From contig NW_008806275.1 of NCBI RefSeq assembly GCF_000400465.1, positions 217,602-249,601 of the forward strand: a DNA stretch of 32,000 nt, in the 5' to 3' direction. The first letter of the stretch is position 1. Each line of letters begins with the position of its first letter. Made by a program: the position numbers and the translations under genes. The notes under the pieces are model-generated. The model made no database searches. It was not told the origin of the DNA and saw only the letters and a list, made by a program, of their open reading frames with translations. Shown here piece after piece: positions 3,478 to 32,000 of this stretch. This DNA is from Wallemia ichthyophaga EXF-994. Taxonomy: Eukaryota > Fungi > Basidiomycota.

Positions 3478-3934
3478 ATGTTTTACAAGTCAATCGTCGT
3501 CGCCGCTATCGCCTCAATGGTCGCTGCCGCACCTACCCAAACTGGTGCCCCTGCAGCTAAGCGCTCAGCAGACTCCTACGGTAACCAAGCCACTTGGTAC
3601 AATGCTGAGACCGGAAACCGTGGTGCTTGCGGCCAGTACTTATCAAACGACGATCGTTTTGTCGCTGTCGGATTTGGCTCACCAATCCCATGTGGACAGT
3701 GGATGGTGGGTGAAAAGACTAACTATTCGACCCCACTAACAACAAATGCAGGGCTTCAACGTCAACGGCGTCACTAGCTACGGTTACGTTGCCGACAAGT
3801 GTGCTTCATGCGCCAACAACCACTACGACATGTCCGAAGCCCTCTTCAACGACTTTGGTGCATTCGGCCAAGGTGTCATCAACGACATCTGGGCATGGCA
3901 AGTCGATAGCTGGGTTGAGCCAAGCACCCTCTAG
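3478..3934 (+). CDS. Secreted expansin-like/RlpA-like double-psi beta-barrel protein, copy 1 (~136 aa, intron 3706-3751)
   Basis: Signal peptide MFYKSIVVAAIASMVAAAP; ATWY..GACG, FVAV, CGQ, VADKCASC..HYDMSEALF pattern typical of fungal DPBB/loosenin-like proteins; GTGGGT..ACTAAC..CAG intron joins two ORF-track fragments. Confidence 0.85.
3484..3798 (+). repeat. Direct repeat shared by the two expansin-like genes (partner 5240-5554, offset 1756)
   Basis: Read by eye as identical over 3484-3765 including intron 1, one synonymous SNP (aac/aat), then identical to 3798. Confidence 0.9.
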
Positions 3935-5181: not shown

Positions 5182-5233
5182 TGAGAATCATTTGTAGCTC
5201 TTCTTTATCTACAACACGCACACTCTCTTTACA

Positions 5234-5711
5234 ATGTTCTACAAGTCAATCGTCGTCGCCGCTATCGCCTCAATGGTCGCTGCCGCACCTACCCAAACTG
5301 GTGCCCCTGCAGCTAAGCGCTCAGCAGACTCCTACGGTAACCAAGCCACTTGGTACAATGCTGAGACCGGAAACCGTGGTGCTTGCGGCCAGTACTTATC
5401 AAACGACGATCGTTTTGTCGCTGTCGGATTTGGCTCACCAATCCCATGTGGACAGTGGATGGTGGGTGAAAAGACTAACTATTCGACCCCACTAACAACA
5501 AATGCAGGGCTTCAACGTCAATGGCGTCACTAGCTACGGTTACGTTGCCGACAAATGTGAGTTGCAGAATGCTTGTGCCAAAATTTTCTAACAAGATAAA
5601 GGCGCTGCATGTGCAAACAACCACTACGACATGTCCGAAGCACTCTTCACAGATCTTGGTTCAATGCCTCAAGGTGTATTGAACGACGTTTGGGCCTGGC
5701 AATTGGACTAA
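5234..5711 (+). CDS. Secreted expansin-like/RlpA-like DPBB protein, copy 2 (~128 aa, introns 5462-5507 and 5557-5601)
   Basis: 5' part identical to copy 1; second intron GTGAGT..CTAAC..AAG restores CAACANNHYDMSEALFTDLGSMPQGVLNDVWAWQLD*. Confidence 0.85.
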
Positions 5712-13975: not shown

Positions 13976-16312
13976 TTAAAATGGCGTCTCACACACTACA
14001 CACTTTCCAGCGCTGCTTGGCGATTTGCACATGCATATACTGCAGCTCCTCTCATTCCCGCCTTGCTTAGCCGCTGCCCAGAGGGGGTTGAGTGTGGCTG
14101 GTGTGGCTGATACTGTTGACGGCTGCTCGTCTACCCTTATGGCAAAGGAGATGGATGGTACTGCTTCCACCTTCTCCTTCAGCCCGGGTGCTATCTTGCT
14201 CACTGGGATATTAAGCAGCGAGTTGAAAGTAAATGAAGGTATCTCCGATACTGCTTTAGATTGTGCTTTGTCCTTGGCGTCTTGTGGAGGTGGTGTAGTT
14301 GCGGTTGTGGCTGTGGTTGATGATTCTGGTGTTGGTGTCGAAGCTGGGAAAATGTTGACAAATGTGGAGCTCTTGTTGTCTTTCGCTTCACCTTCAACCT
14401 TGTTCACTTGCGCTTCCTTAGCTGCAGTTGAGAATGAGGGGAAAGATGGGAATTGCGATGGTTGAGGTTGTGCTTTACCCTTCTTCACTTGATCCTCTTC
14501 AAGTTCCTTATCATCGTCCGATGCCTTGGCTGGCTCTTCATCTTTTGCTTCTTCCACTTCATCCATCTCCTCTTCGTCTTGTTCCAGTTCGTCGTGTTCC
14601 ATTTCGTCACTCTCTTCTTCCTTCTCCTGTTCGACATCCTCTTCTTTCTCACCATCTACATCTACATCACTGTCACTGTCGATGTCTATGGTTTCAGTGG
14701 TTTTTGCAGGTGGCTTAGGCGAGGGTGGAGTTGGTTGCACAGACGAGGCGAAAGTAGGCTTCGGCTGAGAGGAATGTGATTGAGCGAGTGAGCTATTTTG
14801 TGGCTGTGTCTGTCCGAAAGCGCGATCGGTTGACTGCATCTCTAAAGCCTGCTTCTTCGGTGATGGTTCGGCTTTAGCTGCGAGTGGACCGAATGCTCCC
14901 GTTTCAGGCTGCGAACGACCTTCAGCTTTATCAAAGGAGGGTTTGCTCAGGTCGTTAGATGTCGCTGAACCTTTCTGCAACTCGTTCTCGTCAGCTTTTC
15001 TCTTGTTTTTCTATTAACGTCAGCTGGAGTGATCAAGGATGCTAATTTCACCTACGGATGGATCTGTCTGTTCGATCAGATCGAGTGCGCTTACGTTTGC
15101 ACCTTTGTTTTCTTCTGATTTCTCTCCATCAGTCTTCTTCTCGGGAGCAACACTCTTCCTAGAATTAGAATCACGCAGCTTAGATGGTCGAGGTGTACGA
15201 GACTTAGAAATACGAGCGACAGGGTTGTTATTTTGGTATGGGTTGATGGTCTCATTTGATGGTTTGTTAGAAACAGGTTCATCACCCAAAACACCCAAAA
15301 CAGCATCAGCAGCTCTACTACTGAGCTTTGAAGGTGTGTTGTGATCCTCTCTCTGCTTGCTTTTCTCAGGTGAGGGTGATTGAGATGATTGAGATTCAGC
15401 CGTTTGTACTTGACGGAGTGGAGAGGGTCGAACGACGGTAGCGGGTTTAGAAAACCGTGGAACACTCAAATGGGACGATTTTGAAGGAGTGGAAGTGAGT
15501 TTTGGTTGTGATTGCTGGTGTTTTTTGTTTTCTACCTGCTGCTGCTGCTGTTGTTGTTTTGAGTCTGCGTTTGAATCATCAGTTCTGCGCCTCTTGCCCG
15601 TGTCGATGGGGAGTGATGAACCAACGCCGATGGATCTGCCTACATTTTCCAACGAGCTTGAGCTGTTTCTTCTATTTGATTGGGATGGGCTGCCGAAACC
15701 AGCGCCCATGTAGATAGGTCTCTTCCTTGCAGATAAAGAACCACCGAGGCTTTGTCTGGAGTTTCTCGAACTTACGCTGCTTCTCTGGGAGAGGTTAGAA
15801 CGGGCAGGGGATAAGAAAGCGTTAACAGAGCTAGTTTGTGGTTTGCGTGTGGGGGTAGTGGAAGTGCCTGGAGAGAATAGGGCGACGGAGGGGATGTTCT
15901 GTGATTGGTCGAGTGGAGGTTGTTGGATTGAGCTGCCGATCAATTTGAAACATTGAACGGCTTCCTCAGAGGTGAGTGAGCGGTTCCCCTTGTCTTTAAA
16001 AAAGTTGGATAGCAGGTTGTTGGTTTGCTGTGAATCATCTGGCTGTCTCCAGTCGATGAGATCTTCAGTGGGATGAGCGCCTAGTTCCTCGATATCCATT
16101 GGTGAGTCAATGTGGGCATCTTTAAGGCCATCTCCGTGATTGTCTCCGGAGCCGTGAGCATCGCCGGAGCCATCACCATCACCATCACCATCACCAGTGC
16201 CATCTCTATAACTCGATTTGAAGGGAGATGAAATTAAATTATAAAAAGAGCTAAAACCAGTCGATCTCCTTTTTTTATTTTGAGTTTTTGAGTAAGGACT
16301 CGAGTGGTTCAT
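13976..16312 (-). CDS. Largely disordered nucleoporin-like protein (Nup60/Nup1/Nup153-like) with C-terminal RanBP2-type zinc finger, ~763 aa, intron 15011-15055
   Basis: Two long ORFs joined in frame by GTAGGT..GCTGAC..TAG; amphipathic N-terminal SSFYNLISSPF; RKRPIYMGAGFG; terminal CSIC-x10-CVVC; Ser/Pro-rich and acidic tracts. Confidence 0.6.
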
Positions 16313-16334
16313 GGTTGTAAGTGAACAACCAACA

Positions 16335-16826
16335 ATGCCTTCTCCAGAATCGCCAGGCCAATTTCCACTCATCGACGTTGATCCTCACTTCAGCAGAGTC
16401 GTTAGATTTTTCAGGCCATCTGACTACGTTGCCTGGGGTGCTCTGTCCACGGCCACCCCTGGTTTGTACTACGCTTGGGAACAAATCAACCCAACAAACG
16501 CCATCAAGCAAGTCAAAGTTAAATTGGCTGTGCCTACCACTCTCGGCGTGATCGGCGGCTTCTTACTCGCCTATCAAAGATCGTCCTTCAGATTCTTTGG
16601 TTGGACTGAGAATGGTCAAGAGCAGGAGAAAGATATGGCTGAGCTATCATCCAGAGCCAACCAAGGCAAACCCCTCTACGGTGACACTGGCCTCTCCCCA
16701 TACCTCCAAGGCGTCGCTCACAGGAACTCTGCCTTCTCTCAACTCAAATTGGCAACTATCCCGTGGTTTAACTTTGCTAACCATAGCCATCACGGTGTCG
16801 ACGCTGACAAGTACTCAAATAACTAA
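16335..16826 (+). CDS. NUXM: NADH-ubiquinone oxidoreductase 21 kDa (20.9 kDa) subunit, fungal complex I
   Basis: FPLIDVDPHFSRVVRFFRPSDY, GGFLLAYQRSSFRFFGWTEN, PLYG..LSPYLQGVAHRNS, FNFANHSHHGVD; a second in-frame ATG lies at 16311. Confidence 0.9.
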   Translation: MPSPESPGQFPLIDVDPHFSRVVRFFRPSDYVAWGALSTATPGLYYAWEQINPTNAIKQVKVKLAVPTTLGVIGGFLLAYQRSSFRFFGWTENGQEQEKDMAELSSRANQGKPLYGDTGLSPYLQGVAHRNSAFSQLKLATIPWFNFANHSHHGVDADKYSNN

Positions 16827-16881
16827 TTTGTACAAATTTTCATCCATTTCCCCCTTCTTCTCGTACCTCCATGAGCTGCAC

Positions 16882-19336
16882 ATGTCCGCCGTCGATACCA
16901 GCATCTCCCACGCGCACACCGCCGTATCCACCCACTTCCGCTCTCTCTCTCTATCGCTATCTCTCTGGTTCGTTCTCATCTCCACCGCCATCTCCGCAGG
17001 TATCATCTCTGCTTGTCTAGATATCATCATCGACTGGCTTTCTGATCTCAGGCAAGGCCACTGCACGTCTCTCTTCCTGCGCTCACTCAAGAGCTGCTGT
17101 CCGATGCACCACATGTGCGACGATTGGATCGAGCACACGACGGCGACGAATAACATCATCGCCTTTCTTGTCTACGTCTTCTCTGCCATACTCTTGGCAC
17201 TCGCATCAGCTACTCTCGTCGCTAAACTCGCTCCACGCGCTTTCCACACGGGCATCCCCGAAATCAAAGCTATTCTTGGCGGTATTGCTATACGAGATTT
17301 CTTATCAATGCGCACGCTCGTCGTGAAAGCTGTTGCGCTGTCCCTCAGTGTAGCCTCTGGGCTGTCTCTTGGCAAAGAAGGGCCACTGATACACGTCACC
17401 TGCGCTCTTGCCGAGTTGTACATGGGGGTGGTACGCAGGATCGGTGTAGGTGTAGGTGACTGGACAAATTCCGGCGCGCGTCAGCGTCAGACATACGCAG
17501 CTGCTGCAGCTGCTGGTGTGAGTGTAGCATTCGGTGCACCATTAGGAGGTGTGTGTCAACTTAACAGCCATCACCCTGCCCCCTCACCCTCAACTGCACA
17601 GGCGTCATGTTCGCATTGGAAGAACTTGACATAAATCTCTTCCCTACCAATACTCTCTGGCAGGCGTTTGTTTGTGCTGCACTCGCCGCAGTAACGCTGC
17701 AGTGGTGCAACCCATTCGGGACGGGGAAGCTAGTCCTCTTCTCCGTTTCTACTAACCAGTCTTGGAAGCAGTTTGAATTGGTCTTCTGGCTCCTCCTGGG
17801 CGCACTCGGCGGGTTGGCGGGTGTTGCGCTTTTACGGCTTAACCTATTCTTCGCTAGGTTGCGCCGCGATACCACTCTCAGACGCTACCCTATCCTCGAA
17901 ACGACCGCCGTCGCTCTCCTTACTGCTCTGCTGAGTTATGCGAGTATCCTGACGAGGTGTGTGGGTTTATTTTAGAGTGCTGTGTTGCTATAGTGCTATT
18001 TTGCTCTATTGCTATGCTATGCTCTTCAACACTCATACTCACACTCACTGACACGCTCACAGAGTGCAGAACACTTCACTAGTCGCAGCGCTCTTGCAGG
18101 AGTGTTCCAATACCAACACCACATCAGCACCAACGCTACAGCTACATGCCACAGTGCTGCTTTGCAACAGTGACCGGCGTGTAAGCGTGACAGTTATGCT
18201 ACTGGCCTACGCTGCCGTGGTGAAGCTGCTCCTTACAGCCTACACATTCGGTCTCTCTGTACCTGCCGGTATATTTCTCCCGGGTCTCTCCATCGGTGCG
18301 TGTATGGGACGCGCTCTCGGTGGATTACTCGAATTGGTCGAAGAGCGCTACTCGACGCTAGCTATTTTCGCCGATTGTCATGGTGCGAGTGATGGTGGCG
18401 GGTGTATCCGCCCCGGTCTCTACGCTACTGTCGGCGCTGCTGCAACTCTCGCTGGTATTACGCGTATGACTGGTGAGTGAGGTTTTATTTTGTGGTGTTT
18501 TCTTCCTTTTACTTACTTTAATCTTTATCTCATCTCTCATCTCACCTTCTACAGTCTCGCTCGTCGTCATCATCTTCGAACTTACTGGCGCACTCTCGCA
18601 CGTCGTCCCGATCATGATCGCGGTGATGACGGCCAAGTGGGTAGCAGATGCCTTTGGGAAGCAGGGTGTGTTCACGGCATGGATTTCTCACCAGCAGTAC
18701 ACATATATCCCGCAGGTGGATATTGATGTTGGGTTGGGGGTACGGGGCGCGAGTGTCCGTGATATGCACGGCGTGTGTGCGCGCGACGTCGCTCTGTCCC
18801 ATTATCCCACTCTGCCCGCTGATGGGGAGATTAGGGAATTGATGGAGCTGACGCGTGGTAATGATGATGATGATGCTCACACTCACACTCATGGCTACGC
18901 TATCATTACCCGCAACGATAGTCTGCTTGTTGGTTGGGTTCAGGCAGAGAAGATTGTTGCTATTGGTGGTGTAGTGGAGTCTAATTCAACCATCCACTCT
19001 TCTTTCTCCTTCAACCAAACAGAAACCCCAGACACACTCGATCTTAGCACATATGTCGATACAGCCCCGCTTTTCTTCTACGCGTCGACGCCAATTAACG
19101 TGATTGTAGCGACGTTCCAGAGTATGGGGGTGGATAGAGTGTTTGTTGTGAGCCAGCCAGGCACGCTAGTTGGAGTGATTGAGCGTGTACAGATATCGCA
19201 GCTGATGGCAGGCAGAGCGGGTGGATTGGGGCTGGGCTGGCCGGCATGTCTCACCAGAAGCAAAGGGAGAAAGGAATATGAGCAAGTGGAGATGGTTGAG
19301 CAGGCAGGGGAATACCAATTAGAAGAAGGAGGATGA
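16882..19336 (+). CDS. CLC-family chloride channel/antiporter (Gef1/ClC-3-like) with degenerate CBS tail, about 3 introns
   Basis: Signature motifs GIPEIK, GKEGPL, GVSVAFGAPLGGV/LFALEE, PAGIFLPGL, PGLYATVGAAA, SLVVIIFELTG. Confidence 0.92.
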
Positions 19337-19412
19337 AGGAACGTGAAAAAGATGGAAAAAGACAACAAAATGTTTTGTTTTATTTAAGATGACGATATCC
19401 GATCAAGATAGA

Positions 19413-19814
19413 TCAAGTAGACAGCTCTTGTACTTTCTCAGCATTGTTCATATCCTGCTCTCGTTGCTGCTTGTGCATATAAATTCTAGCAAGTTGAGTG
19501 AGACCAGTACAACCGACGCCAAAGTTAACAGCCGCGAGAGAGTAGTTTATGGGTTTGATGACAAGCGAGTACCTGACCCATATGAAACCAGTAGCAGCGA
19601 GTGCTAAATTCTGATTTAAACTCAGTTTATCTGCAGGTTTATTGAAGTCTTTGAGTCCGGCAGCTACTAGAGCCCATTTCATCAACGGTGCCCAGAAGAA
19701 AACAGTTTTTGGGCCTAAATTAGATAAATAAGGGGATTGCTATTGAAATATAATATCCCCACCCGCTGCCGAGTTCATAAATCTACCAAATCCAGATCCA
19801 GACGCAGAAGCCAT
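19413..19814 (-). CDS. MPC2: Mitochondrial pyruvate carrier subunit, ~117 aa, intron 19715-19762
   Basis: FMNSAA/GPKTVFFWAPLMKWALV, LSLNQNLALAATGFIWVRYSLVIKPINYSLAAVNF. Confidence 0.92.
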
Positions 19815-19855
19815 TGTGATTGTTGATAAAGAACAGCCAAAAAAACCAAATTTAA

Positions 19856-22482
19856 ATGAAATTCACTCAGGCGTTGAATATTAATCTGGTACCAGAATGG
19901 AGTGATTATTATCTCGGTTATGAACAGCTCAAGAGGAGGATATATCAGCTAGAACGGGACTTGGAGACGCAGCAACCACGACAGCAACCACGACAGCAAC
20001 CAAGTGATATTGAAACTCCTCTTCTATCCGCTACAGACTCGCCTGCGATTCGTTTATTCAGTCCAATCCTTGAAAAAGAAGTTGACAGGATTACCACCTT
20101 TTATAAGGATAAAGAGAGTGAATTAGATAGTGATCGACAAAGCCTCTTTAATTTCATTCATGCGACTGAGTTGGATGTCGTAAGGAATAGCCAGGATTTT
20201 AGACCTTCGAGAGATGACACCCGCGATACATACAATACACATAATACACACAATACGCACGACAATAACGATCATAGCGATAGCGACGACGATGATGACG
20301 ATATCACAAAGCATACTCAACCCAAGACTCACTTTGCAAGACGATCTTTCAATGACGATTTTCACCATGATCAGCGTGATACAAACGTCGAAAACAACCC
20401 ACCCAGACGCAAATCTATCGCTGTCATCAGAAGGCCCTCCCTTGATCTCCTTGATGACGACATTGAGGACTCTATCTGGACATCAAAATCCAATTACGCC
20501 ATCGACCAGCGCATTATGATTAAAAAACGTCTCACTGAGCTCTTTGTGCAGTTCAGCGAGCTCAAGCAGTTTGCACAAATAAACGAAACTGGTTGCAAGA
20601 AAATTCTCAAAAAGTAAGCCACTCTGTGCCTTTAGACAACCTCTCACCCCACGCCACACTAAAGGTTTGACAAGATCACTGAAAACGATCTCAAAACCTC
20701 CTTTATGGATAATGTTGTCCTCGTCGCTTACCCTTTCACAGAAGAGACCAAGAAGAGAGTTGACAACATACTCGACCAGTTTATTGATGTATATGCACGC
20801 GTTGTTACCCTCAATAATCGCGCTGTCGCACACAATCAACTCAAAGCGCGTGAGTGATGTTTTTGATGAGTACTCATCACTCAACCTCTATAGATCTTCG
20901 CGAGTATGTCGTACTCGAGCGTAACAGTGTGTGGAGACAGGTGAGTTAAGCATCTCTACACAAGAACACCCCTCACACCTCTCAGATGGTTGGCCAGGAG
21001 CGTAGATCGCAAGGTGTTCAGATTCAGTCGCAGTCGTTGACCGAAAAGAAACCTGCGACTGGTATTGCCAAGTACATTCCTCCCTGGCTCACCTCGAAGA
21101 TGGTCGGGCTCCTTACTGCCGTCGTCGTCTTTATCACTCTCCTCAATCTCGACATATTCGACAAAGGCGAGGAGAATTGTCTCGCGCTTCTTGTGTTTTG
21201 TGTTATACTATGGTCATCAGAAGCAGTGCCGCTATTCGTCACATCGCTGTCTGTGCCTCTCTTCATAGTCTTACTGCGCGTCGTCAAGTACCCCGATGGT
21301 CATAGAATGGAAGCGGAGGATGCAGCCAAGTATATACTATCCCAGATGATGAACCCAACCATATTCCTTCTCATTGGCGGCTTCACCATTGCTGCTGCAC
21401 TATCCAAGCATGGCATTGACAGGGTTTTAGCCCTACGAATCCTCAACCTAGCAGGCACAGATCCCAAGCTAGTCCTGCTAGCACAGATGGGAGTTGCATG
21501 TTTCTCTGCGATGTGGATCTCCAACGTAGCCGCGCCTGTGCTATGCTACTCGCTCGCACAACCGCTCCTTCGCAAATTGCCACCCAAGTCTCCCTACGCA
21601 CGGAGTATGATTCTCGGCATAGCGCTTGCAGCCAACATCGGTGGGCAGGCATCACCTATAGCGTCACCGCAGAATGTGATAGCGCTCGATGCGATGGATC
21701 CACCGATAGATTGGCTGCAGTGGTTCGCTATTGCACTACCAGTCGCGTCTACTTCGCTCGTCCTGATCTGGGGTCTGCTCCTCCTCAGCTACGGCAGCGG
21801 GGAGGGCACCGTCATCACCAAGCTTAAACCTTCAAAAGACAGCTTCACATGGACGCAGTGGTATATCGCTGCTGTTACTATCCTCACTATCGTCTTGTGG
21901 TGTGTTGCTCACTCTCTTCAAAGCGTCATAGGCGATATGGGCATCATCGCTATACTCCCCCTCATCGCCTTCTTCGGAACAGGCATCCTCTCCCCGCACG
22001 ACTTCAACTCATTCCCGTGGACTATTGTATATCTCGCCATGGGCGGTATTGCCCTCGGCAAGGGTGTGATGAGCTCCGGACTGCTTGATAGTGCTGATGA
22101 CGCAGTCAAGGAGATGGTCGGCGGGTTTGGGGTGTGGAGGATACTTGTTATTTTCTCAGTCTTGGCTACCGTGGTCGCCACATTCATCTCGCACACTATC
22201 GCTGCTGTCCTGCTGGTGCCGATCGCGGCACAAGTCGGTCAAAACCTCTCCCCTCCTCATGGTCGACTGCTCATCATGGCAACGGCACTCATCTGCTCAG
22301 CTGGAATGGGTCTCCCTGTCAGTGGATTCCCTAACATAGCCGCTATCAATCAGGAAGACAGCATGGGTGAGCGGTACCTGACAACCAACGACTTTCTTAA
22401 GAATGGCCTGCCGGCGACTGTGCTAGCAGCTGCAGTTGTCGATACGATAGGCTATTTGATAATGAGATTGATGGGGTTGTAG
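19856..22482 (+). CDS. SPX-domain low-affinity phosphate transporter (Pho87/Pho90/Pho91 family), about 3 introns
   Basis: MKF..VPEWSDYYLGYEQLK (SPX), LKQFAQINETGCKKILKK, SEAVPLFVTS, GGFTIAAALSK, SAMWISNVAAP, GMGLPVSGFPN. Confidence 0.93.
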
Positions 22483-22531
22483 TGTGTAGTGGGTAGTTAT
22501 AAATATATGTACAAAACAATTCGTTCACTTT

Positions 22532-23091
22532 CTACTTGCTAGATGGCGATCCACTGCGTCTTCTGTCGTGATTCTGCTTCTGCTTCTGCTTAGCTGCCCC
22601 ATCTTGGAATCCAGGTGGGGGAACTGAGAAGGCAAAATCAGCATGGACAACCTTCTCGAGCAGTTCAGTGCCGCTAGCGTGATCGACTGCCTTCTTTGCG
22701 TCTTCGTACGACTCGAATTCGAGCAGAGCGTATCCCTTCACGTACCCCGACCTTCTATCCAAATTGAGGTGTAAGTTACGAATATGGCCGAAGTCTGCGA
22801 ATTTATCCTGTACATCCTCCTCCGAAGCCTCTTCGTGGATATTCGTGACGAGAATTACCCATCCCTCAACGGCTGTGCGAGTCTTGTTAGCCTGCCTTGT
22901 CAGCCTTGCGTTGCGTGCACCACCCACATTTTGCAGCTTTGCTATCGAAAGCCATTTGATCCTCTACACGCTCGTAGTCGCCATCTCTTTTTGCATCTGT
23001 TGCGCGTGAGTTGATGCTCTCTCTCTTGCTCAAGTGTACACCCACCTCTATCGCCATCGCCTCCGCCGAATCCTCTCCCTTTTCTGGACAT
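22532..23091 (-). CDS. RBM8A: Exon junction complex RRM protein Y14, 2 introns
   Basis: MSRKGRGF start; SVEGWVILVTNIHEEASEEDVQDKFADFGHIRNLHLNLDRRSGYVKGYALLEF. Confidence 0.93.
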
Positions 23092-23425
23092 GGCAGCTGT
23101 AGGCGTGTAAGTGGGGTGTATGTGCTCGCTCGCTGCCCTTACGGTCCCTATCGAGCTGCATATTCGTATCGGACATGCTGAGTGTGTGTGTTCTGGGTGT
23201 TCTGGGTGTTGGGATGTAAGAGCGAGTTTATCCATGAAATTGTATCCGATGGTAATGTTGTAGTGATGTGAGCTGTGGAATCTTTATTGGCGCTATTTCT
23301 CCAAAGCCTTTCCTCCAAGCTGGCAGATGTCGCTATTGATGCCCACTTGCTCACTACTCATTGATAAATAATAACAAGGATTTATAAATATGTGTATAAT
23401 AAATTATAGTGTTTTAAAGCAGTGG

Positions 23426-24010
23426 CTATACCCATCCATCCTTTACACCGCTTACGACGGAGACGAGCGGAATGCGACAGTAACGGATCTGTTCATCTGC
23501 TGATGGCTGATGCATGGGATTTGCACACCTAATATCTATAGAACCACTAACCTGCATGTATTGCTTCCGAACGTTGCTTCCGCTCTTGGCTGCCCCAGCC
23601 CCAGCCAATCATAGCACACAATTCACCGATCAAATCACTAACATCACTCGTGTAAGCCTTATAATCAGCGCACTGCTTACATTCACCACCCTCATCACCA
23701 ATATGTCCAACCAGCCTGATATGCAGGCCCCTCAGAAGCCCCGCCTCGACAGGCTGTAAAAAAACAGCAGTGATGTCATAATCTCGATCGACCTCCTTTT
23801 GAGAATGGTCTGAATGCTCAAATCGCGTAAACAAATTAGAACAAGGCAAATTAATACTGAGATAGATTTATGGGAAGTGCTACCGCTCAAAACTCCCCTC
23901 GAATCAGCTAAAATACACCCTGAAATGCCAAAGAGTCGCCGAGAACATCGTCCAAGGAATGCTGAGGCGTGATAAAGAAAATAAAAATAAAAACATACAT
24001 ACATTGCCAT
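23426..24010 (-). CDS. Possible small multi-exon hypothetical protein, structure uncertain
   Basis: ATG at 24010 followed by GTATGT donors; protein-like frame 23547-23849 (DRDYDITAVFLQP..GWGWGSQERKQR) ending at a GTTAGT donor; no family recognised. Confidence 0.35.
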
Positions 24011-24174
24011 TTAAATTTACAACACACTGATCTCAGTATCATCGTGATCTGTACCTGAAATGAACAAAAAACTTGATGACGACGATTATCAGTGAATATC
24101 AAAGATATTTAAGTTTATTTGCGCGCTCGGTTATTTTTCAAGTATAACGACCACTATCTGTTAAACAGAATACA

Positions 24175-25268
24175 ATGATTTCCTCAAGAGCAGCAACATC
24201 CTCACAACAAACTGAATCCCGTTGCAGACGTGAATCTGTCAACAAGCTCGAGAAATCTCTTACACAGATATTGAAGGAGCAGTCCTCCTCAACGCAAGAG
24301 AGAACAGTGAAGCCTCTTCCAGGTGCGAGCGATGTCGGTATGATCCTCAGCGACGTCGACGGCACTCTCCTCGACGACGAGCACGATGTCCACCCTCGCA
24401 CCTCAGAAGCTATCAGATACATCAGACAGAACCATCCAGAAATTCCTGTGATCCCAGTTACTGGAAAGCAACGCGCCTCGTGCGATCTTGTTGCGAAACG
24501 CTGTGGCTTGGAGGACATGCCATCTGGCTGCTGTCACGGCTCAATCATCTACACTCCCGAAGGCCAGATCGAGTCTCAGTTGGGAATTGACCCGGCTGTC
24601 GTAGTTGACGTCACAAATGTTCTTATACAGAGAAACCGCTCCGTTTTTATCTACGAACATGACTCTGTCAACTGCGTCGCTCTTCAAGGACACCCTACCC
24701 TCGACTTCTACGAGATCACCCGCGGATACGACCCTAGCATTAGAGATGTTCGCGGAACTAACTATATGGACAGAGTCGCTTCCGGCCAAGTCGTCGTAAC
24801 TAAAATGTTCTTGCCAATGGAAGTGTCTATCGTTCCAGATGAAATGGATCACCTCAACTCTGTCTTCAAGAATGGTGAGGACTACAGAATGACTCGCGCA
24901 TTGAAAGATATCATCGAATTGATTCCTGCAAAGATCGACAAATCTGTCGCCCTTGATCACTTCTCCAAGATGTACAACGTCGAAAAAGGAAAAATCATGA
25001 CTTTCGGTGATGGTGAAAACGACTGTGGCATGTTCAAGGCATCTGGAATGTCTGTGTCAATGGGTAATGCTATGGCCTTACCAGCTCAAGTCAGCGATTT
25101 CTCCACAAAGACTAACAATGAAGGCGGTGTTGGCTGTATTCTTGATGCTATCTTCCGGTTAGTGATTCGTTATGTCTTAGAAACAGTCCTAACTCCTCAC
25201 ACAGTCCAGAGTACAAGTACAAGTCAGACGTTCAAGAAACCGATTCTGGTTACGCCTCAGCAGCTTAA
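24175..25268 (+). CDS. Cof-type HAD-superfamily (IIB) hydrolase, ~348 aa, intron 25158-25204
   Basis: Motif I ILSDVDGTLL, motif II VTGK, motif III K(SVAL), motif IV FGDGENDCGMF. Confidence 0.88.
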
Positions 25269-25679
25269 TTAAGCTCGTATACCACTCCATAGATTCGTCT
25301 TTATTTTGTCTATCTATTCGTGTATCGCAATTTTATTTTTATAAGTTTTCAAGCTATTCGATCGTTATCTTGGATATTAAAAACTATTTTGAAAAACACA
25401 TAATTCACTAATCAAGATAAATATCTTGGCAATATCTCAATTTTTACCCTTCATGACGCGTGTTGCTCTTTCCGACGTGCGGCGTCCACACAAGTAAATG
25501 TTGGCTCCAGGAAAAAGCATAACAAGCCTTACATGTACTTACATACTTAGCAAATGAGTGCGGCTCCTATATTTACATTCAAGTGGTTAAATCAGAATTA
25601 GTCTATGAGAATACAATGGCTTGTTGAACATGCACTTTTTATGCGTTGGGTTTTCAAGAAGGCCATAATCACAATGACC

Positions 25680-26038
25680 CTAAAGTATTTTGCTCATGAA
25701 ATTACCTCTGCAGTCATCGTGCTCGTGTTTGTCATCGTGGTGCTTGTGTTCACCTTTGCGTTCGCCCTTGTGGTTGATTGCCTCCTCGGAGTAGAGCTCT
25801 GGGTAGTACTCGCCGCTTGAATTGAGTTCTTTCTCCTCTTCGTGGGTCAAATGGTGGAAGTCAATGCGACCATCGTGCTGTACTGTGTGAGAGTCTAAAG
25901 ACAAACAGCATAACAACCTACTTTATCTCTAACACGGAGAGCTCTCTTGCCGGCACCAAAACCTCTGACATCAAGAGGAGCAGCCGTAGAAACGGAGAGG
26001 ACGGCAGCGACTACGAGGAGGGCGATTGATGATCTCAC
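25680..26038 (-). pseudogene. His-rich secreted protein copy A; GTG in place of ATG and an altered 3' end (pseudogene or non-AUG gene), intron 25878-25921
   Basis: gtg-RSSIALLVVAAVLSVSTAAP signal peptide with an in-frame upstream TAA and no ATG; homology to copies B and C stops at 25713 (tail CRGNFMSKIL*). Confidence 0.6.
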
Positions 26039-26487
26039 TGTTGCAAGGTGTGTTGTGTTGTAGTATAAAAAGAATTAAAAGGCCTTTTTAGCTTGCTCGT
26101 TAGTCGTCCACACTTTTTAGCGTCGAACTAAAGTGTTCTATTTTTTTTTCACAGTCCGGCACACCCAACTGAAAGGGATTCATGTTACGTGAAAGAGTAT
26201 GACGTAAAAGAACTGAGCAGGGCATTTAGTTTTCAAGATAAAGATAACTATATAATGCATGAACAAATTGCACAAGAATGAAACACTTTTGAAGTTTGAT
26301 GATGAAGATTTTCAACAAGTATGCTTTGCAAGCTACTTTCACATCTGAAACAGTATAGCATGACACAGTCCTTATCAAGCATTGTGTGATGCAGACTACA
26401 TATTATTCGGCGAAAATTTTAACAACTACGCCTGTAAGTCTTCATAAATAAATTCATTATTATACAGTCTATGCAATGCAATATGTG

Positions 26488-27629
26488 TCATTTACCCGGC
26501 GGCACGAAATCTTTGCTGAGATCAATGCCTTGCTCCTGCAAGTGTGTATTTGTGATCTTGACGCGCCTATTTGAGCTGCCCGCCTTCTTTCTCTTCTTTT
26601 GCGCCTGCTGTGGCGCTGCTGGAGCCACCTCCGTCTTTGATGTACGTTTGAGACCGGCTGAGAAGGGTGAGGTTGAGTACAACTAGTTACAAAGCTTTGC
26701 TCACCATCGTCAAGATCTCTAGCAACTTCTGATTCAACTGGCACGTTCAAGCTGTTCCACAGTCCTCTAAACTCTGTTGAGTTGAGTTAGGATATTCAGT
26801 CTCCTTCTGGTAACCATATAACCCTCACCATCCTGTACTTCAATCGCGTCCTTGACATTGTTCTCAAACACAGTTCTCATCCCTTGTCCGTCTTTACCCC
26901 TCAACACGATAATTTCTTTCTCGCGTTCTAGTTCATCGATAGCTTGTGGAGCTCCAGGCCATGATTCCTTGAGTATGTTGACACGCATACCTCCTCTCGG
27001 CGCATAAGCTTTGACATGTGCCAGCAGTTCAGCCTTAGATTTCATCGGGAAATCATGGCGATAGCTGTAAAGATCGAGCTTGGTGTCGTGCTGCACTCTG
27101 TCATGCGAGTTGAATAAATCGAGTAAACCAGGTGTCCGTATGAGTTCTATACCAGATCTAACGATAAGATCTTCTAATCGAATAGGAGCATTGTAATCCT
27201 GTAAGTATGTGAATATTCCGTCAACGTATGCTCATAATGACAATCTACCTTGATGAACTGGACGAGATAGGCGAGCTGTGAGTTGATATGCATACCTACA
27301 CCGGTATCACGAGGCTGTGAGAATATCTCTGCTGGTTTATCAGAATACAAAAGGCAGACTAGTGGCAGCATCACCATTATTCTTCTTCCGCCTGGCAGCG
27401 GCAGCGGCAGCAGCTTGCTGCGAGCCTGCTATGGGTATACCGTCATCGCCGTTTGCACCAGCACCAGGCGTCGGTGCAACGCTGGGAGATCTCGATTCGA
27501 CACCACCCCACGCTTGCGGCTGCTGGCTCGCAACTTTCTTTCTAAAAGCCTGGGCTTGAGCTTGCAATGACCTATTAAGGGCATCAATAAACCAATTTAA
27601 TATGTATCTCGTTGCTGTTAGATTTACAT
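26488..27629 (-). CDS. TFA2: Transcription initiation factor TFIIE beta subunit, copy 1, 5 introns
   Basis: IFSQPRDTGVGMHINSQLAYLVQFIK, LYSYRHDFPMKSKAELL, LKESWPGAPQAIDELE, LWNSLNVP, KITNTHL..IDLSKDF. Confidence 0.9.
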
Positions 27630-27926
27630 TTCTGCCAAAGATGATGATAGTCGAGGTGAAAGGGAGATAAGGCAGGGGTGGTTGGTTGATTACTGGATAG
27701 ATTTATTTGGTCTACAGAATTTGAGTAGATGTCAGATTATTGAGGCCAACATTCATCTCTTACTCATCCACAGCCTTTGTCTTCCTCCTCTACGGCCACC
27801 ACTACCACCCACTCATCCAGTCAGAATCAAATTGAAATTGTCCGTGTGGTTATACAATACACATTTGTTAATTTAGAGAATCATTTTGTTCATTGGGATT
27901 TTAAGCGAGCGTGTCCAACTGCTGTT

Positions 27927-28412
27927 TCAATTGAAAAGACATGGATCGTATTTGCCAGAGGCGATAAACTTCTCCTTCTCCTCAGGAGTGTATCCACACT
28001 TGTCCTTTTGGACCTGGCTTCCTTTCTCCTTGTTTCCACTTTCTGGCTCCTTTGGTGATTCTTTTTGATTTTCCTCTGGTTGCTTTGCTGGTGTTTCTTT
28101 TTTATTATCCTCTGGCTGCTTGGATGGCTCAGATGATTCCTTGTTTTCATTACCTTCCTTCTTGCCTTCTTCTGGCTGCTTTGATTCGCCCTTGCTCTCC
28201 CCGTTGTTTGGGTAGTTACCGGCACCCCAAAGGTCTTCGATCCACTGACCGCTTTGAATAGCTTTGTCAAGAGATCCGTTTTGGTCAGCACCACGCTTGA
28301 CCTGGACATTGGTGAGCACGCTTTTGCTTATTATTCAACATATACTCACCTCCATCTTGGCGGATGCGAGGACCGTTACTGCGAGAAGACCGACAATGTA
28401 AGTTAATTTCAT
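27927..28412 (-). CDS. Orphan secreted Lys/Glu-rich protein, copy 1, ~145 aa, intron 28302-28349
   Basis: Signal peptide MKLTYIVGLLAVTVLASA; canonical GTGAGT..GCTCAC..CAG intron; VKR site; KQPEE/KQPED repeats; CGY..DPC tail. Confidence 0.75.
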
Positions 28413-28736
28413 TGCTCGATTGTAGTTGTAAGTAGAAGAGCAGTGGAAACTGATCTCCTTTAAATAGCTTAATATTTGGTAGATGCCGATTTTTTGTGGG
28501 ATTTAATTTCCTTAGCCTTCCTTTTTTGGTTATCCGGCGAATTGAAGTATGTCTCACAAGACTAGATGCGTTCATACCTACCAGTATGGTAAGAGTTCTG
28601 CACAGCTGCGCCACTGAGCAGTTGCTATTAAAGTTTAAGATAAGCTTTTAATAAAGTGTCTCTGCATCAATGTTTCAAAGGTAGCGTGAAAATATTAATG
28701 AAACGCAGTACGTTCTACAATGGTATGCGATGGTAT

Positions 28737-29113
28737 TTAGTGCTCTTCGTTGTGCATGTCTTTCTCGTCATGCTTGTTTTCCTTGTGGTCATCGTGCTCG
28801 TGTTTGTCGTCGTGGTGCTTGTGTTCACCTTTGTGTTCGCCCTTGTGGTTGATTGCCTCCTCGGAGTAGAGCTCTGGGTAGTACTCGCCGCTTGAATTGA
28901 GTTCTTTCTCCTCTTCGTGGGTCAAATGGTGGAAGTCAATGCGACCATCGTGCTGTACTGTGTGAGAGTCTAAAGACAAACAGCATAACAACCTACTTTA
29001 TCTCTAACACGGAGAGCTCTCTTGCCGGCACCAAAACCTCTGACATCAAGAGGAGCAGCCGTAGAAACGGAGAGGACGGCAGCGACTACGAGGAGGGCGA
29101 TTGATGATCTCAC
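28737..29113 (-). CDS. His-rich secreted protein copy B (chimeric, GTG start), ~110 aa, intron 28953-28996
   Basis: Same GTG signal-peptide exon as copy A; C-terminus HKGEHKGEHKHHDDKHEHDDHKENKHDEKDMHNEEH* as in copy C. Confidence 0.6.
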
Positions 29114-29562
29114 TGTTGCAAGGTGTGTTGTGTTGTAGTATAAAAAGAATTAAAAGGCCTTTTTAGCTTGCTCGTTAGTCGTCCACACTTTTTAGCGTCG
29201 AACTAAAGTGTTCTATTTTTTTTTCACAGTCCGGCACACCCAACTGAAAGGGATTCATGTTACGTGAAAGAGTATGACGTAAAAGAACTGAGCAGGGCAT
29301 TTAGTTTTCAAGATAAAGATAACTATATAATGCATGAACAAATTGCACAAGAATGAAACACTTTTGAAGTTTGATGATGAAGATTTTCAACAAGTATGCT
29401 TTGCAAGCTACTTTCACATCTGAAACAGTATAGCATGACACAGTCCTTATCAAGCATTGTGTGATGCAGACTACATATTATTCGGCGAAAATTTTAACAA
29501 CTACGCCTGTAAGTCTTCATAAATAAATTCATTATTATACAGTCTATGCAATGCAATATGTG

Positions 29563-30704
29563 TCATTTACCCGGCGGCACGAAATCTTTGCTGAGATCAA
29601 TGCCTTGCTCCTGCAAGTGTGTATTTGTGATCTTGACGCGCCTATTTGAGCTGCCCGCCTTCTTTCTCTTCTTTTGCGCCTGCTGTGGCGCTGCTGGAGC
29701 CACCTCCGTCTTTGATGTACGTTTGAGACCGGCTGAGAAGGGTGAGGTTGAGTACAACTAGTTACAAAGCTTTGCTCACCATCGTCAAGATCTCTAGCAA
29801 CTTCTGATTCAACTGGCACGTTCAAGCTGTTCCACAGTCCTCTAAACTCTGTTGAGTTGAGTTAGGATATTCAGTCTCCTTCTGGTAACCATATAACCCT
29901 CACCATCCTGTACTTCAATCGCGTCCTTGACATTGTTCTCAAACACAGTTCTCATCCCTTGTCCGTCTTTACCCCTCAACACGATAATTTCTTTCTCGCG
30001 TTCTAGTTCATCGATAGCTTGTGGAGCTCCAGGCCATGATTCCTTGAGTATGTTGACACGCATACCTCCTCTCGGCGCATAAGCTTTGACATGTGCCAGC
30101 AGTTCAGCCTTAGATTTCATCGGGAAATCATGGCGATAGCTGTAAAGATCGAGCTTGGTGTCGTGCTGCACTCTGTCATGCGAGTTGAATAAATCGAGTA
30201 AACCAGGTGTCCGTATGAGTTCTATACCAGATCTAACGATAAGATCTTCTAATCGAATAGGAGCATTGTAATCCTGTAAGTATGTGAATATTCCGTCAAC
30301 GTATGCTCATAATGACAATCTACCTTGATGAACTGGACGAGATAGGCGAGCTGTGAGTTGATATGCATACCTACACCGGTATCACGAGGCTGTGAGAATA
30401 TCTCTGCTGGTTTATCAGAATACAAAAGGCAGACTAGTGGCAGCATCACCATTATTCTTCTTCCGCCTGGCAGCGGCAGCGGCAGCAGCTTGCTGCGAGC
30501 CTGCTATGGGTATACCGTCATCGCCGTTTGCACCAGCACCAGGCGTCGGTGCAACGCTGGGAGATCTCGATTCGACACCACCCCACGCTTGCGGCTGCTG
30601 GCTCGCAACTTTCTTTCTAAAAGCCTGGGCTTGAGCTTGCAATGACCTATTAAGGGCATCAATAAACCAATTTAATATGTATCTCGTTGCTGTTAGATTT
30701 ACAT
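29563..30704 (-). CDS. TFA2: Transcription initiation factor TFIIE beta subunit, copy 2
   Basis: Identical to copy 1 at +3075. Confidence 0.88.
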
Positions 30705-31001
30705 TTCTGCCAAAGATGATGATAGTCGAGGTGAAAGGGAGATAAGGCAGGGGTGGTTGGTTGATTACTGGATAGATTTATTTGGTCTACAGAATTTGAG
30801 TAGATGTCAGATTATTGAGGCCAACATTCATCTCTTACTCATCCACAGCCTTTGTCTTCCTCCTCTACGGCCACCACTACCACCCACTCATCCAGTCAGA
30901 ATCAAATTGAAATTGTCCGTGTGGTTATACAATACACATTTGTTAATTTAGAGAATCATTTTGTTCATTGGGATTTTAAGCGAGCGTGTCCAACTGCTGT
31001 T

Positions 31002-31487
31002 TCAATTGAAAAGACATGGATCGTATTTGCCAGAGGCGATAAACTTCTCCTTCTCCTCAGGAGTGTATCCACACTTGTCCTTTTGGACCTGGCTTCCTTT
31101 CTCCTTGTTTCCACTTTCTGGCTCCTTTGGTGATTCTTTTTGATTTTCCTCTGGTTGCTTTGCTGGTGTTTCTTTTTTATTATCCTCTGGCTGCTTGGAT
31201 GGCTCAGATGATTCCTTGTTTTCATTACCTTCCTTCTTGCCTTCTTCTGGCTGCTTTGATTCGCCCTTGCTCTCCCCGTTGTTTGGGTAGTTACCGGCAC
31301 CCCAAAGGTCTTCGATCCACTGACCGCTTTGAATAGCTTTGTCAAGAGATCCGTTTTGGTCAGCACCACGCTTGACCTGGACATTGGTGAGCACGCTTTT
31401 GCTTATTATTCAACATATACTCACCTCCATCTTGGCGGATGCGAGGACCGTTACTGCGAGAAGACCGACAATGTAAGTTAATTTCAT
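31002..31487 (-). CDS. Orphan secreted Lys/Glu-rich protein, copy 2
   Basis: Identical to 27927-28412 at +3075. Confidence 0.75.
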
Positions 31488-31811
31488 TGCTCGATTGTAG
31501 TTGTAAGTAGAAGAGCAGTGGAAACTGATCTCCTTTAAATAGCTTAATATTTGGTAGATGCCGATTTTTTGTGGGATTTAATTTCCTTAGCCTTCCTTTT
31601 TTGGTTATCCGGCGAATTGAAGTATGTCTCACAAGACTAGATGCGTTCATACCTACCAGTATGGTAAGAGTTCTGCACAGCTGCGCCACTGAGCAGTTGC
31701 TATTAAAGTTTAAGATAAGCTTTTAATAAAGTGTCTCTGCATCAATGTTTCAAAGGTAGCGTGAAAATATTAATGAAACGCAGTACGTTCTACAATGGTA
31801 TGCGATGGTAT

Positions 31812-32000
31812 TTAGTGCTCTTCGTTGTGCATGTCTTTCTCGTCATGCTTGTTTTCCTTGTGGTCATCGTGCTCGTGTTTGTCGTCGTGGTGCTTGTGTT
31901 CACCTTTGTGTTCGCCCTTGTGGTTGATTGCCTCCTCGGAGTAGAGCTCTGGGTAGTACTCGCCGCTTGAATTGAGCTCTTTCTCCTCATCGTGGGTCAA
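31812..32000 (-). CDS. His-rich secreted protein copy C, 5' end beyond the window
   Basis: THDEEKELNSSGEYYPELYSEEAINHKGEHK..HNEEH*; differs from copies A and B at 31977 and 31989. Confidence 0.7.
   Translation of the reverse strand: MTHDEEKELNSSGEYYPELYSEEAINHKGEHKGEHKHHDDKHEHDDHKENKHDEKDMHNEEH

What the first reader, a model, noticed from the sequence alone, without database searches (positions are those of the whole stretch)
25713..32000. 3075-bp tandem duplication with a chimeric junction gene, the footprint of unequal crossover between His-rich paralogues
Seen in sequence: four diagnostic SNPs separate the three His-rich copies. At 25734/28809/31884 and 25759/28834/31909, copy B equals copy C. 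At 25827/28902/31977 and 25839/28914/31989, copy B equals copy A. So B is C-type at its 3' end and A-type at its 5' end, and the switch lies within 28835-28901. Established knowledge: this is the pattern non-allelic homologous recombination between flanking direct repeats produces. Inference: the A and C paralogues act as recombination handles that make the cassette an expandable copy-number locus, and the apparent full identity of the interior means the event is very recent or strain-specific.
Basis: partly seen in the sequence, partly recalled or inferred. Interest (0 to 1): 0.7.

Follow-up and report, generated by a model that had tools for sequence, protein, structure and literature searches.

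The report
Doubtful 3-kb duplication beside assembly gap
The 3075-bp tandem repeat is really in the deposited sequence of the salt-loving fungus Wallemia ichthyophaga, but it ends at an assembly gap in an old short-read genome and is absent from about 18 other strains, so it is more likely an assembly error than a recent duplication.

Summary
Window 25713-28925 equals 28788-32000 (period 3075) with four mismatches, at the stated positions.

The window is the Wallemia ichthyophaga EXF-994 reference (scaffold KE007225.1). That assembly used SOAPdenovo with K=21 and only 500-bp and 2-kb libraries. The window's last base is followed by a 54-N gap. A third copy of the 1409 bases before the gap follows it.

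Each unit carries TFIIE-beta (TFA2), a small secreted Lys/Glu-rich protein gene and part of a His-rich secreted-protein gene.

- "A" is a real, species-specific, 3'-truncated one-module copy of that gene.
- "C" is not a separate paralogue. It is the terminal module of a 402-aa, five-module parent gene ("D") lying beyond the gap.
- A and D flank a single-copy interval in the other W. ichthyophaga assemblies. W. hederae has no A.
- The junction gene B occurs only in the reference.
- Two of the four "diagnostic" SNPs are not diagnostic. In other strains the genuine terminal module of D has exactly B's bases.

The layout fits unequal crossover between A and D. It fits an assembler's wrong turn through a shared stretch of up to 133 nt equally well. 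I put about 0.6 on artefact and 0.33 on a real duplication private to EXF-994. Interest is low.

The parts
24175..25272 (+). Unique left flank (L): HAD/Cof-type hydrolase gene. The ORF is given here; the annotated product is 348 aa with one intron.
   Evidence: Pfam PF08282 E=2e-39. Orthologue of E3P92_01083. Syntenic in all strains and in W. hederae.
25680..26038 (-). Copy A: a 3'-truncated, one-module copy of the His-rich secreted-protein gene. Signal-peptide exon 26038-25922, 44-nt intron 25921-25878, module exon 25877-25680 ending ...HEHDDCRGNFMSKIL*. In this strain the signal-peptide exon starts with GTG, not ATG.
   Evidence: Splice model verified by translation. It matches annotated proteins P0005/P0007 of other strains. 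Present next to the HAD gene in all W. ichthyophaga contigs fetched and absent from W. hederae.
25713..28787 (.). Repeat unit 1 (3075 bp).
26488..27816 (-). TFIIE-beta (TFA2) gene, copy 1 (340-aa product, several introns).
   Evidence: Pfam PF18121 E=5.5e-20 on the exon ORF. PF02186/PF18121 on the annotated 340-aa orthologue. ATG and stop confirmed.
27927..28412 (-). Small secreted Lys/Glu-rich protein gene, copy 1 (145 aa, one 48-nt intron). No known family.
   Evidence: Splice model, identical to EOR04010.1/J056_002088. No Pfam match.
28737..29113 (-). Copy B, the junction gene. It has A-type upstream DNA, signal-peptide exon (29113-28997) and intron (28996-28953), then a module exon (28952-28737) ending with the full tail ...HEHDDHKENKHDEKDMHNEEH*.
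   Evidence: This architecture occurs only in the reference among 30 loci.
28788..31862 (.). Repeat unit 2 (3075 bp). It differs from unit 1 only at the positions matching 25734 and 25759.
28835..28967 (.). Stretch within which the A-type/D-type switch must lie (offsets 47-179).
   Evidence: Exact-identity runs A vs D-last are 47-113 and 115-179. The terminal modules of other strains carry T at offset 114, as B does.
29563..30891 (-). TFIIE-beta (TFA2) gene, copy 2, identical to copy 1.
   Evidence: Annotated in the reference as the fused model EOR04009.1.
31002..31487 (-). Lys/Glu-rich secreted protein gene, copy 2, identical to copy 1.
31812..32000 (-). Copy C: tail and last 138 nt of a terminal module, cut by the contig end. 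A 54-N scaffold gap follows immediately. Its bases at 31977/31989 equal those of the internal modules of the parent gene.

Best explanation
The repeat is real in the deposited sequence, but I think the doubling is most likely an assembly error.

**Shown.** The locus in W. ichthyophaga reads: HAD gene, A, X, D, right flank.
- X is about 3 kb and holds TFIIE-beta and a Lys/Glu-rich secreted protein gene.
- D is a 402-aa secreted His-rich protein gene. It has a signal-peptide exon, four 73-aa internal modules and a terminal module. Each module follows a GFGAGKR dibasic site and its own 44-nt intron, which gives a 263-bp exon-plus-intron tandem period.
- A is a species-specific partial copy of D's 5' part, in direct orientation.

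**Inferred.** In the EXF-994 reference only, X is written 2.46 times: A-X-B-X-C, then 54 N, then the last 1.27 kb of X, then D. I think this is an assembly artefact. A, the terminal module of D and the first module of D share exact runs of up to 133-160 nt. In any de Bruijn graph this creates a 3075-bp cycle: X-end, tail, module, A-type intron, signal-peptide exon, X-start. With K=21 and inserts of at most 2 kb, nothing could fix how many times that cycle is traversed. A walk that takes the A-type exit once writes exactly the 'chimeric' B and a perfect second copy. The unmerged overlap across the gap shows that gap filling did misbehave here.
For: 1. The window is 100% identical to KE007225.1 of GCA_000400465.1. 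A 54-N gap starts at the base after window 32000. It is followed by a copy of window 30592-32000 with 1 mismatch, at 31989.
2. Assembly method: SOAPdenovo 1.04, K=21, 500-bp and 2000-bp libraries only (PMC3849046). The 3075-bp unit with 3142 identical bases exceeds every insert.
3. Independent assemblies of other strains (IDBA-Hybrid, k up to 120, guided by this very reference; PMC6738226) show one X. Contig SPOD01000009.1 runs D-X-A-HAD without a break. The X contigs of the other strains run from an internal D module through the terminal module and X into A's exon and intron.
4. The full tail preceded by an A-type intron occurs only in the reference.
5. Their contig ends sit where the 160-nt A/D-m1 exact run predicts for k=120, so no B junction is needed to explain them.
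6. B's module (G,T,T,T) is simply the normal terminal module of other strains. C (G,T,C,A) and the copy beyond the gap (G,T,C,T) carry internal-module bases. Module copies are therefore mixed in this assembly.
7. Prior, from general knowledge and my own inference: a neutral tandem duplication with 3-kb perfect repeats is unstable, so it should be rare in any one clone.
Against: - Short-read assemblers usually collapse duplications rather than create them.
- Units 1 and 2 are joined without any N.
- A gap closer that respects read pairs should not recruit A-locus reads to the right of X in a single-copy genome. A gap-free second copy is therefore easier to obtain if reads across B exist.
- The structure is exactly what unequal crossover between A and D predicts.
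- The substrate for such a crossover (direct repeats with 133-160 nt of perfect identity, 3 kb apart) is demonstrably present.
- I had no reads and could not test depth or junction support.
Confidence: 0.6

Rival explanations
1. The duplication is real, recent and private to strain EXF-994. Unequal sister-chromatid or ectopic recombination between copy A and the terminal module of D (crossover within offsets 47-179) duplicated X. This created B, a new one-module gene with A's promoter and signal-peptide exon and D's full C-terminal tail. Only the third partial copy across the gap is then an assembly error.
For: - The layout A-X-B-X-(terminal module) is the expected product.
- B equals the distal type at offsets 21 and 46 and has A-type intron, exon and upstream DNA.
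- The single-copy arrangement A-X-D exists in other strains.
- The exact runs of 67-160 nt are adequate substrates.
- A-locus alleles at offsets 114 and 126 vary among strains (T,T; T,A; C,A; C,T). This suggests ongoing exchange between modules.
- Both A/B differences lie in the first 47 nt, left of any possible crossover.
- Assemblers rarely invent gap-free perfect copies.
Against: - Seen in one K=21 short-read assembly only, at one of its 19 gaps (101 contigs in 82 scaffolds).
- No insert spans the unit.
- Absent from about 18 informative strain assemblies, although they were guided by the duplicated reference.
- Every base of B exists in A or in the normal terminal module, so nothing in B requires a real molecule.
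- Perfect interior identity is uninformative in such an assembly.
- The longest identity between A and D (160 nt, with D's first module) would give a different, 4.1-kb unit.
Confidence: 0.33
2. The true locus in EXF-994 holds three or more copies of X, or the sequenced culture was a mixture of copy-number variants. The 54-N gap then hides the rest of a third unit rather than marking an unmerged overlap.
For: The assembly contains 2.46 units, with a partial unit on each side of the gap. Tandem arrays, once formed, expand and contract easily (general knowledge).
Against: The copy left of the gap (C) does not look like a second B. Its bases at offsets 114 and 126 are those of the internal modules. 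It stops at offset 137, and the next base (offset 138) differs between the terminal and internal modules, which is typical of a stalled extension. The sequences on the two sides of the gap overlap perfectly over 1409 nt, which is the usual signature of an unmerged overlap. No other strain shows any array.
Confidence: 0.07

Closest known systems
Tandem segmental duplication by non-allelic homologous recombination between flanking direct repeats (for example CMT1A-REP in humans, or Ty/LTR- and paralogue-mediated duplications in yeast)
   Same: Two direct repeats (A and D) flank a unique interval. The product has two head-to-tail units and a junction repeat that is distal-type on one side and proximal-type on the other.
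   Different: The physical existence of the junction is unproven. It is seen in a single short-read assembly beside a gap. The repeats are only about 165-420 nt long. No reciprocal deletion is possible in a haploid, because X holds TFIIE-beta.
False duplications at scaffold gaps in short-read assemblies (gap-filling overrun or unmerged contig overlap)
   Same: The same 1409 nt lie on both sides of an N run. The copies are perfectly identical. The repeat is longer than the largest insert. The locus is full of short exact repeats that form a cycle in the graph.
   Different: Units 1 and 2 are joined without N's. The extra sequence (3-4.5 kb) is larger than the tens to hundreds of bases usually reported for such artefacts (my recollection, not tested).
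Kex2-processed repeat proteins of fungi (secreted precursors made of tandem peptides separated by dibasic sites, such as the alpha-factor precursor or Ustilago Rep1)
   Same: D has an N-terminal hydrophobic signal-like sequence and five tandem modules, each preceded by GFGAGKR. The smaller neighbour gene also has a KR just after its signal sequence.
   Different: The modules are long (73 aa), acidic and His-rich. Each module is a separate exon with its own intron. There is no sequence similarity to any described family (no Pfam hit; 2 hits among 1.84 billion representatives). Processing is untested.

Membership tests
NAHR-generated tandem duplication | Two or more head-to-tail copies with a constant period | tested here: met
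   Period 3075, 3213 nt aligned with 4 mismatches.
NAHR-generated tandem duplication | Pre-existing direct repeats flank the interval in the unduplicated state | tested here: met
   A-X-D with a single X in strain contig SPOD01000009.1 and in the X contigs of the other strains. Exact runs of 67-160 nt between A and D.
NAHR-generated tandem duplication | The junction repeat is a chimera of the two flanking repeats | tested here: inconclusive
   B is D-type at offsets 21 and 46 and in the tail, and A-type in the intron, exon and upstream DNA. However, the SNPs at offsets 114 and 126 are not A-specific. A mis-threaded assembly would give the same chimera.
NAHR-generated tandem duplication | Physical support: doubled depth and molecules spanning the junction | not testable with these tools
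   No reads of EXF-994 were available. Logan contigs carrying this locus come from other, 98.8-99.3% identical samples.
   The B architecture is absent from all 29 other loci. About 18 strain assemblies show the D architecture upstream of the full-tail module.
Assembly false duplication at a gap | The duplicated sequence abuts an N run and is repeated on its other side | tested here: met
   54 N directly after window 32000. L011 17883-19291 equals window 30592-32000 at 1408 of 1409 positions.
Assembly false duplication at a gap | The data could not resolve the repeat (unit longer than reads and inserts) | tested here: met
   Unit 3075 bp versus libraries of 500 and 2000 bp, K=21.
Assembly false duplication at a gap | Single-copy read depth over the duplicated segment | not testable with these tools
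   No reads available.
Kex2-processed repeat protein (the His-rich gene D) | Secretion signal followed by three or more tandem repeats separated by dibasic (KR) sites | tested here: met
   The translated 402-aa model has MRSSIALLVVAAVLSVSTA followed by five modules, each preceded by GFGAGKR. The signal peptide is judged by eye, not by a predictor.
Kex2-processed repeat protein (the His-rich gene D) | Proteolytic release of the repeat peptides | not testable with these tools
   Needs proteomics of culture supernatant.
TFIIE beta subunit (TFA2) | TFIIE_beta winged-helix 1 and TFA2 winged-helix 2 domains | tested here: met
   PF18121 E=5.5e-20 on the window exon. PF02186, PF18121 and PF22254 on the annotated orthologue.

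The most novel reading that the evidence does not exclude
The duplication is real in EXF-994. A crossover between a young truncated gene copy and the last module of its five-module parent doubled an essential general transcription factor gene (TFIIE-beta). In the same step it rebuilt a complete one-module secreted His-rich protein gene under the truncated copy's promoter. Together with the mosaic alleles seen among strains, this would make the locus a live example of module shuffling and copy-number change in an orphan repeat-protein family restricted to Wallemia, in the most halophilic fungus known.
Probability: 0.33. Interest if true: 0.35.

Novelty: not a real feature. Interest (0 to 1): 0.18.

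Why it matters
If the duplication is an artefact, the public reference genome and proteome of W. ichthyophaga are wrong in three ways.
- They carry a spurious second TFIIE-beta gene.
- Two gene models (EOR04008.1 and EOR04009.1) fuse three unrelated genes.
- The number of modules in the repeat gene is uncertain.

Anyone counting paralogues, BUSCO duplicates or copy-number changes against this reference would be misled.

If the duplication is real, it is an ordinary but tidy case of recombination between paralogues, confined to one strain.

The part worth keeping either way is the locus itself. It holds an orphan, secreted, His- and acid-rich repeat protein. Its modules are separate exons with their own introns. 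It also has a species-specific truncated copy 3 kb away.

Tried and rejected
1. **Serial tandem amplification with random later mutations.** Rejected, because both A/B differences fall in the first 47 of 3075 positions. A is also a separate, older locus, present in all strains with its own truncated tail.
2. **A third independent paralogue 'C'.** Rejected. C is the terminal module of the multi-module gene, seen again beyond the gap.
3. **Haplotype (diploid) artefact.** Unlikely for the reference. The copies are identical and the species is treated as haploid. One other assembly (GCA_004918755.1) does hold two alleles of the A locus.
4. **Exact look-ups that found nothing.** The HAD ORF and the B-specific 84-aa ORF returned no record. 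Neither result is informative.
5. **JGI metagenome scans.** One scan used the B architecture and one used a module core. Both were empty, so that collection holds no W. ichthyophaga module at all.
6. **Word-indexed protein search with the His-rich ORF.** It found only one cluster and missed the 402-aa parent protein. Its silence is therefore not evidence.
7. **Logan contigs (k=31).** They cannot phase SNPs 68 nt apart, and they come from other samples.
8. **Reconstructing how SOAPdenovo and its gap filling produced this layout.** Neither the single-copy nor the two-copy truth gives the observed scaffold without at least one error. I could not turn this into a decisive argument.
Full report
**1. 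The observation.**

Comparing each base with the base 3075 positions downstream shows that window 25713-28925 equals 28788-32000. There are four mismatches: 25734 and 25759 (copy A vs B), and 28902 and 28914 (B vs C). A self-BLAST gives the same result: 3213 nt, 99.88% identity, no gaps.

Between the two pairs of mismatches, 3142 nt are identical. The left boundary at 25713 is sharp. The right side runs off the window.

**2. Where the window comes from.**

The region has fragmented ORFs and short introns, so it is eukaryotic.

The His-rich ORF matches a hypothetical protein of Wallemia ichthyophaga. The HAD hydrolase to the left led to the public contigs that carry the locus.

Locus L011 is KE007225.1:231776-252869 of GCA_000400465.1, the EXF-994 reference. 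Its first 17826 nt are 100% identical to window 14175-32000.

That reference was assembled with SOAPdenovo 1.04 at K=21, from 500-bp and 2000-bp libraries only. It has 101 contigs in 82 scaffolds (PMC3849046).

**3. What lies beyond the window.**

The base after window 32000 is the first of 54 N. After the gap, L011 17883-19291 repeats window 30592-32000 with one mismatch.

The full gene of which 'C' is the end then follows (L011 19103-20531, minus strand). Removing five 44-nt GT..AG introns gives a 402-aa protein, the same length as the deposited model. It consists of:
- a signal-like exon (MRSSIALLVVAAVLSVSTAAPLDVRGFGAGKRALRVRDK);
- four identical 73-aa internal modules (HDGRIDFHHLTHDEEKELNSSGEYYPELYSEEAINHKGEHKHHGHDEHKHHESRGAGARGFGAGKRSLHTRDE);
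- a terminal module ending HKENKHDEKDMHNEEH.

One exon plus one intron makes the 263-bp tandem period seen in the self-BLAST. I call this gene D.

The scaffold therefore reads: HAD, A, X, B, X, C (138 nt), 54 N, last 1.27 kb of X, D, right flank.

**4. Gene content of the unit (all on the minus strand).**

- TFIIE-beta/TFA2: 26488-27816 and 29563-30891 (Pfam PF18121; the 340-aa orthologue; ends checked).
- A 145-aa secreted Lys/Glu-rich protein with one 48-nt intron: 27927-28412 and 31002-31487.
- The His-rich gene, which straddles the unit boundary. 28788 lies 51 nt upstream of B's stop codon.

A (25680-26038) has the same signal exon and intron as B. After ...HEHDD it continues CRGNFMSKIL* instead of the 16-residue tail.

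The 'RG' after A's His-rich stretch aligns with the 'SRG' that follows the internal modules of D. A is therefore a truncated copy of D's 5' part.

The deposited annotation fuses the Lys/Glu-rich gene, TFA2 and the His-rich gene into two 'TFIIE beta' models of 528 and 534 aa.

**5. Other strains and the sister species.**

[quoted passage not shown] They were assembled with IDBA-Hybrid (k up to 120), using this reference as a guide (PMC6738226).

- In GCA_004917865.1 one contig runs from upstream of D through a terminal module, one X, A and the HAD gene for 13 kb. It is 99.4% identical to the window.
- In the other strains X lies on its own contig of 2.6-3.7 kb. On one side this contig enters the terminal module, and in most strains an internal-type intron and linker. 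On the other side it enters A's signal exon and intron, ending near offset 180.
- The contigs coming from the HAD side end at offsets 184-242.
- These break points are what a 160-nt exact run shared by A and the first module and signal exon of D (offsets 139-298) predicts for k=120. They need no B junction.
- A full tail preceded by an A-type intron, the signature of B, occurs only in the reference among 30 loci. By the tool's count of samples sharing each contig, about 18 assemblies show the D architecture there, and three contigs are too short to tell.
- W. hederae has HAD, TFA2, the Lys/Glu-rich gene and a two-module His-rich gene, with no A between HAD and TFA2. A is therefore a W. ichthyophaga novelty, and the single-copy order is ancestral.

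**6. The four SNPs re-examined.**

The table gives + strand bases at offsets 21, 46, 114 and 126.

| Copy | 21 | 46 | 114 | 126 |
|---|---|---|---|---|
| A | A | C | T | T |
| B | G | T | T | T |
| C | G | T | C | A |
| Terminal module beyond the gap | G | T | C | T |
| Internal modules | – | – | C | A |
| Terminal module in five other strain contigs of the same length | G | T | T | T |

- The genuine terminal module of D in those five contigs is identical to B.
- T at offsets 114 and 126 is therefore not an A-type mark. C carries the bases of the four internal modules.
- The same physical module, assembled from the two sides of the gap, differs at offset 126.
- C also stops at offset 137, one base before a position where terminal and internal modules differ.
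- Only offsets 21 and 46 separate A from B. 'A' at offset 21 is an A-locus allele shared by most strains. 'C' at offset 46 is private to the reference.
- The possible switch interval is offsets 47-179 (window 28835-28967). This is up to 133 nt of identity if the true terminal module of EXF-994 is G,T,T,T.

**7. Interpretation.**

Two readings give the same sequence.

*Real event.* Unequal crossover between A and the terminal module of D duplicated X and produced B.

*Artefact.* The shared runs make a 3075-bp cycle in the assembly graph: X-end, tail, module, A-type intron, signal exon, X-start. This cycle exists even for a single-copy genome. With K=21 and no insert longer than 2 kb, the number of turns is not fixed by the data. 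One extra turn writes a perfect second X and a junction made of terminal-module sequence on one side and A sequence on the other.

For the artefact:
- the 1409-nt duplicate across the gap shows gap filling failed here;
- module bases are mixed between copies;
- no other strain has B, even with the duplicated reference as a guide;
- such a duplication would be unstable, so it is a priori rare (general knowledge and my own inference).

For the real event:
- the two full units are joined without N;
- assemblers normally collapse repeats;
- a pair-aware gap filler should not bring A-locus reads to the right of X unless molecules across B exist;
- the recombination substrate is undeniably there.

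I could not reconstruct a route from either truth to the observed scaffold that involves no assembly error. I settle on 0.6 artefact, 0.33 real duplication private to EXF-994, and 0.07 a larger array or a mixed culture. The perfect interior identity carries no information about age, because both copies would be built from the same reads.

**8. What the genes are.**

TFIIE-beta is a standard general transcription factor subunit.

The His-rich modular protein and the Lys/Glu-rich protein have no Pfam family. An exhaustive HMMER scan of 1.84 billion representatives with one module found two proteins: the W. ichthyophaga one, and a 74-aa relative at 73% identity.

The architecture is a signal sequence followed by tandem peptides, each after a KR site. 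It works like a Kex2-processed repeat protein. This is inferred from sequence only, and processing and function are untested. Metal binding and an acidic salt-adapted surface are guesses.

**9. Verdict.**

However, two of the four SNPs are not diagnostic, 'C' is not a separate paralogue, no copy-number variation exists among strains, and the site is visibly misassembled. The finding is of low interest except as an erratum to the reference. The modular orphan gene is a modest curiosity.

Noticed in passing
window 3465-3803 and 5221-5559 (continuing to 3901 / 5702): Two tandem paralogues of a small secreted protein (MFYKSIVVAAIASMVAAAP...KRSADSYGNQATWYNAETGNRGACGQ...). They are 98.8% identical over 339 nt, then 81% over the next 100 nt, and lie 1756 bp apart. 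No Pfam hit on the ORFs.
   Followed up: partly
L011 19103-20531 (KE007225.1, about 3 kb beyond the window end): The parent His-rich gene has four identical internal modules, each one exon plus a 44-nt intron (263-bp period). The extra sequence around the gap (138 + 54 + 1273 = 1465 nt) equals about 5.6 such periods. The true gene may therefore have more modules than were assembled. This is speculative arithmetic.
   Followed up: partly
window 26036-26038 and 29111-29113: In the reference, the signal-peptide exon of A and B begins with GTG where D has ATG. Strain E3P92's copy A has Met at this position (P0007). Other annotations rescue the gene with an upstream MNPFQL exon. A (and B) may be pseudogenes or may use another start.
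   Followed up: partly
L008 (SPOI01000630.1) versus L010/L013 (SPOI01000259.1), both GCA_004918755.1; window 25358-26434: One strain assembly holds two versions of the HAD-flank plus A segment, about 3% apart, and both contigs end at window-equivalent 26434. One version has an internal-module-like tail (ESRGNFMSKIL). The divergent version shares its SNPs with Logan contigs from the SRR2539xxxx samples. This points to a second lineage, a mixed culture or a hybrid.
   Followed up: partly
window 25827/25839 equivalents in L009, L014-L020: Copy A carries T,T, T,A, C,A or C,T at offsets 114 and 126 in different strains. These are the bases of the terminal or the internal modules of D. This looks like repeated gene conversion between modules.
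   Followed up: partly
window 25680-28412 and 28737-31487: The deposited reference proteins EOR04008.1 (528 aa) and EOR04009.1 (534 aa), named TFIIE subunit beta, are fusions of three separate genes. MAKER models in other strains (426 aa) still fuse two of them.
   Followed up: yes
L001 (Logan SRR25393947 contig), end at window-equivalent 28817: A k=31 contig ends 30 nt into the repeat (offset 29). This is the point expected where the HAD-A path and the X-D path merge. That sample also has both repeats, and they are identical over the first 30 nt.
   Followed up: yes
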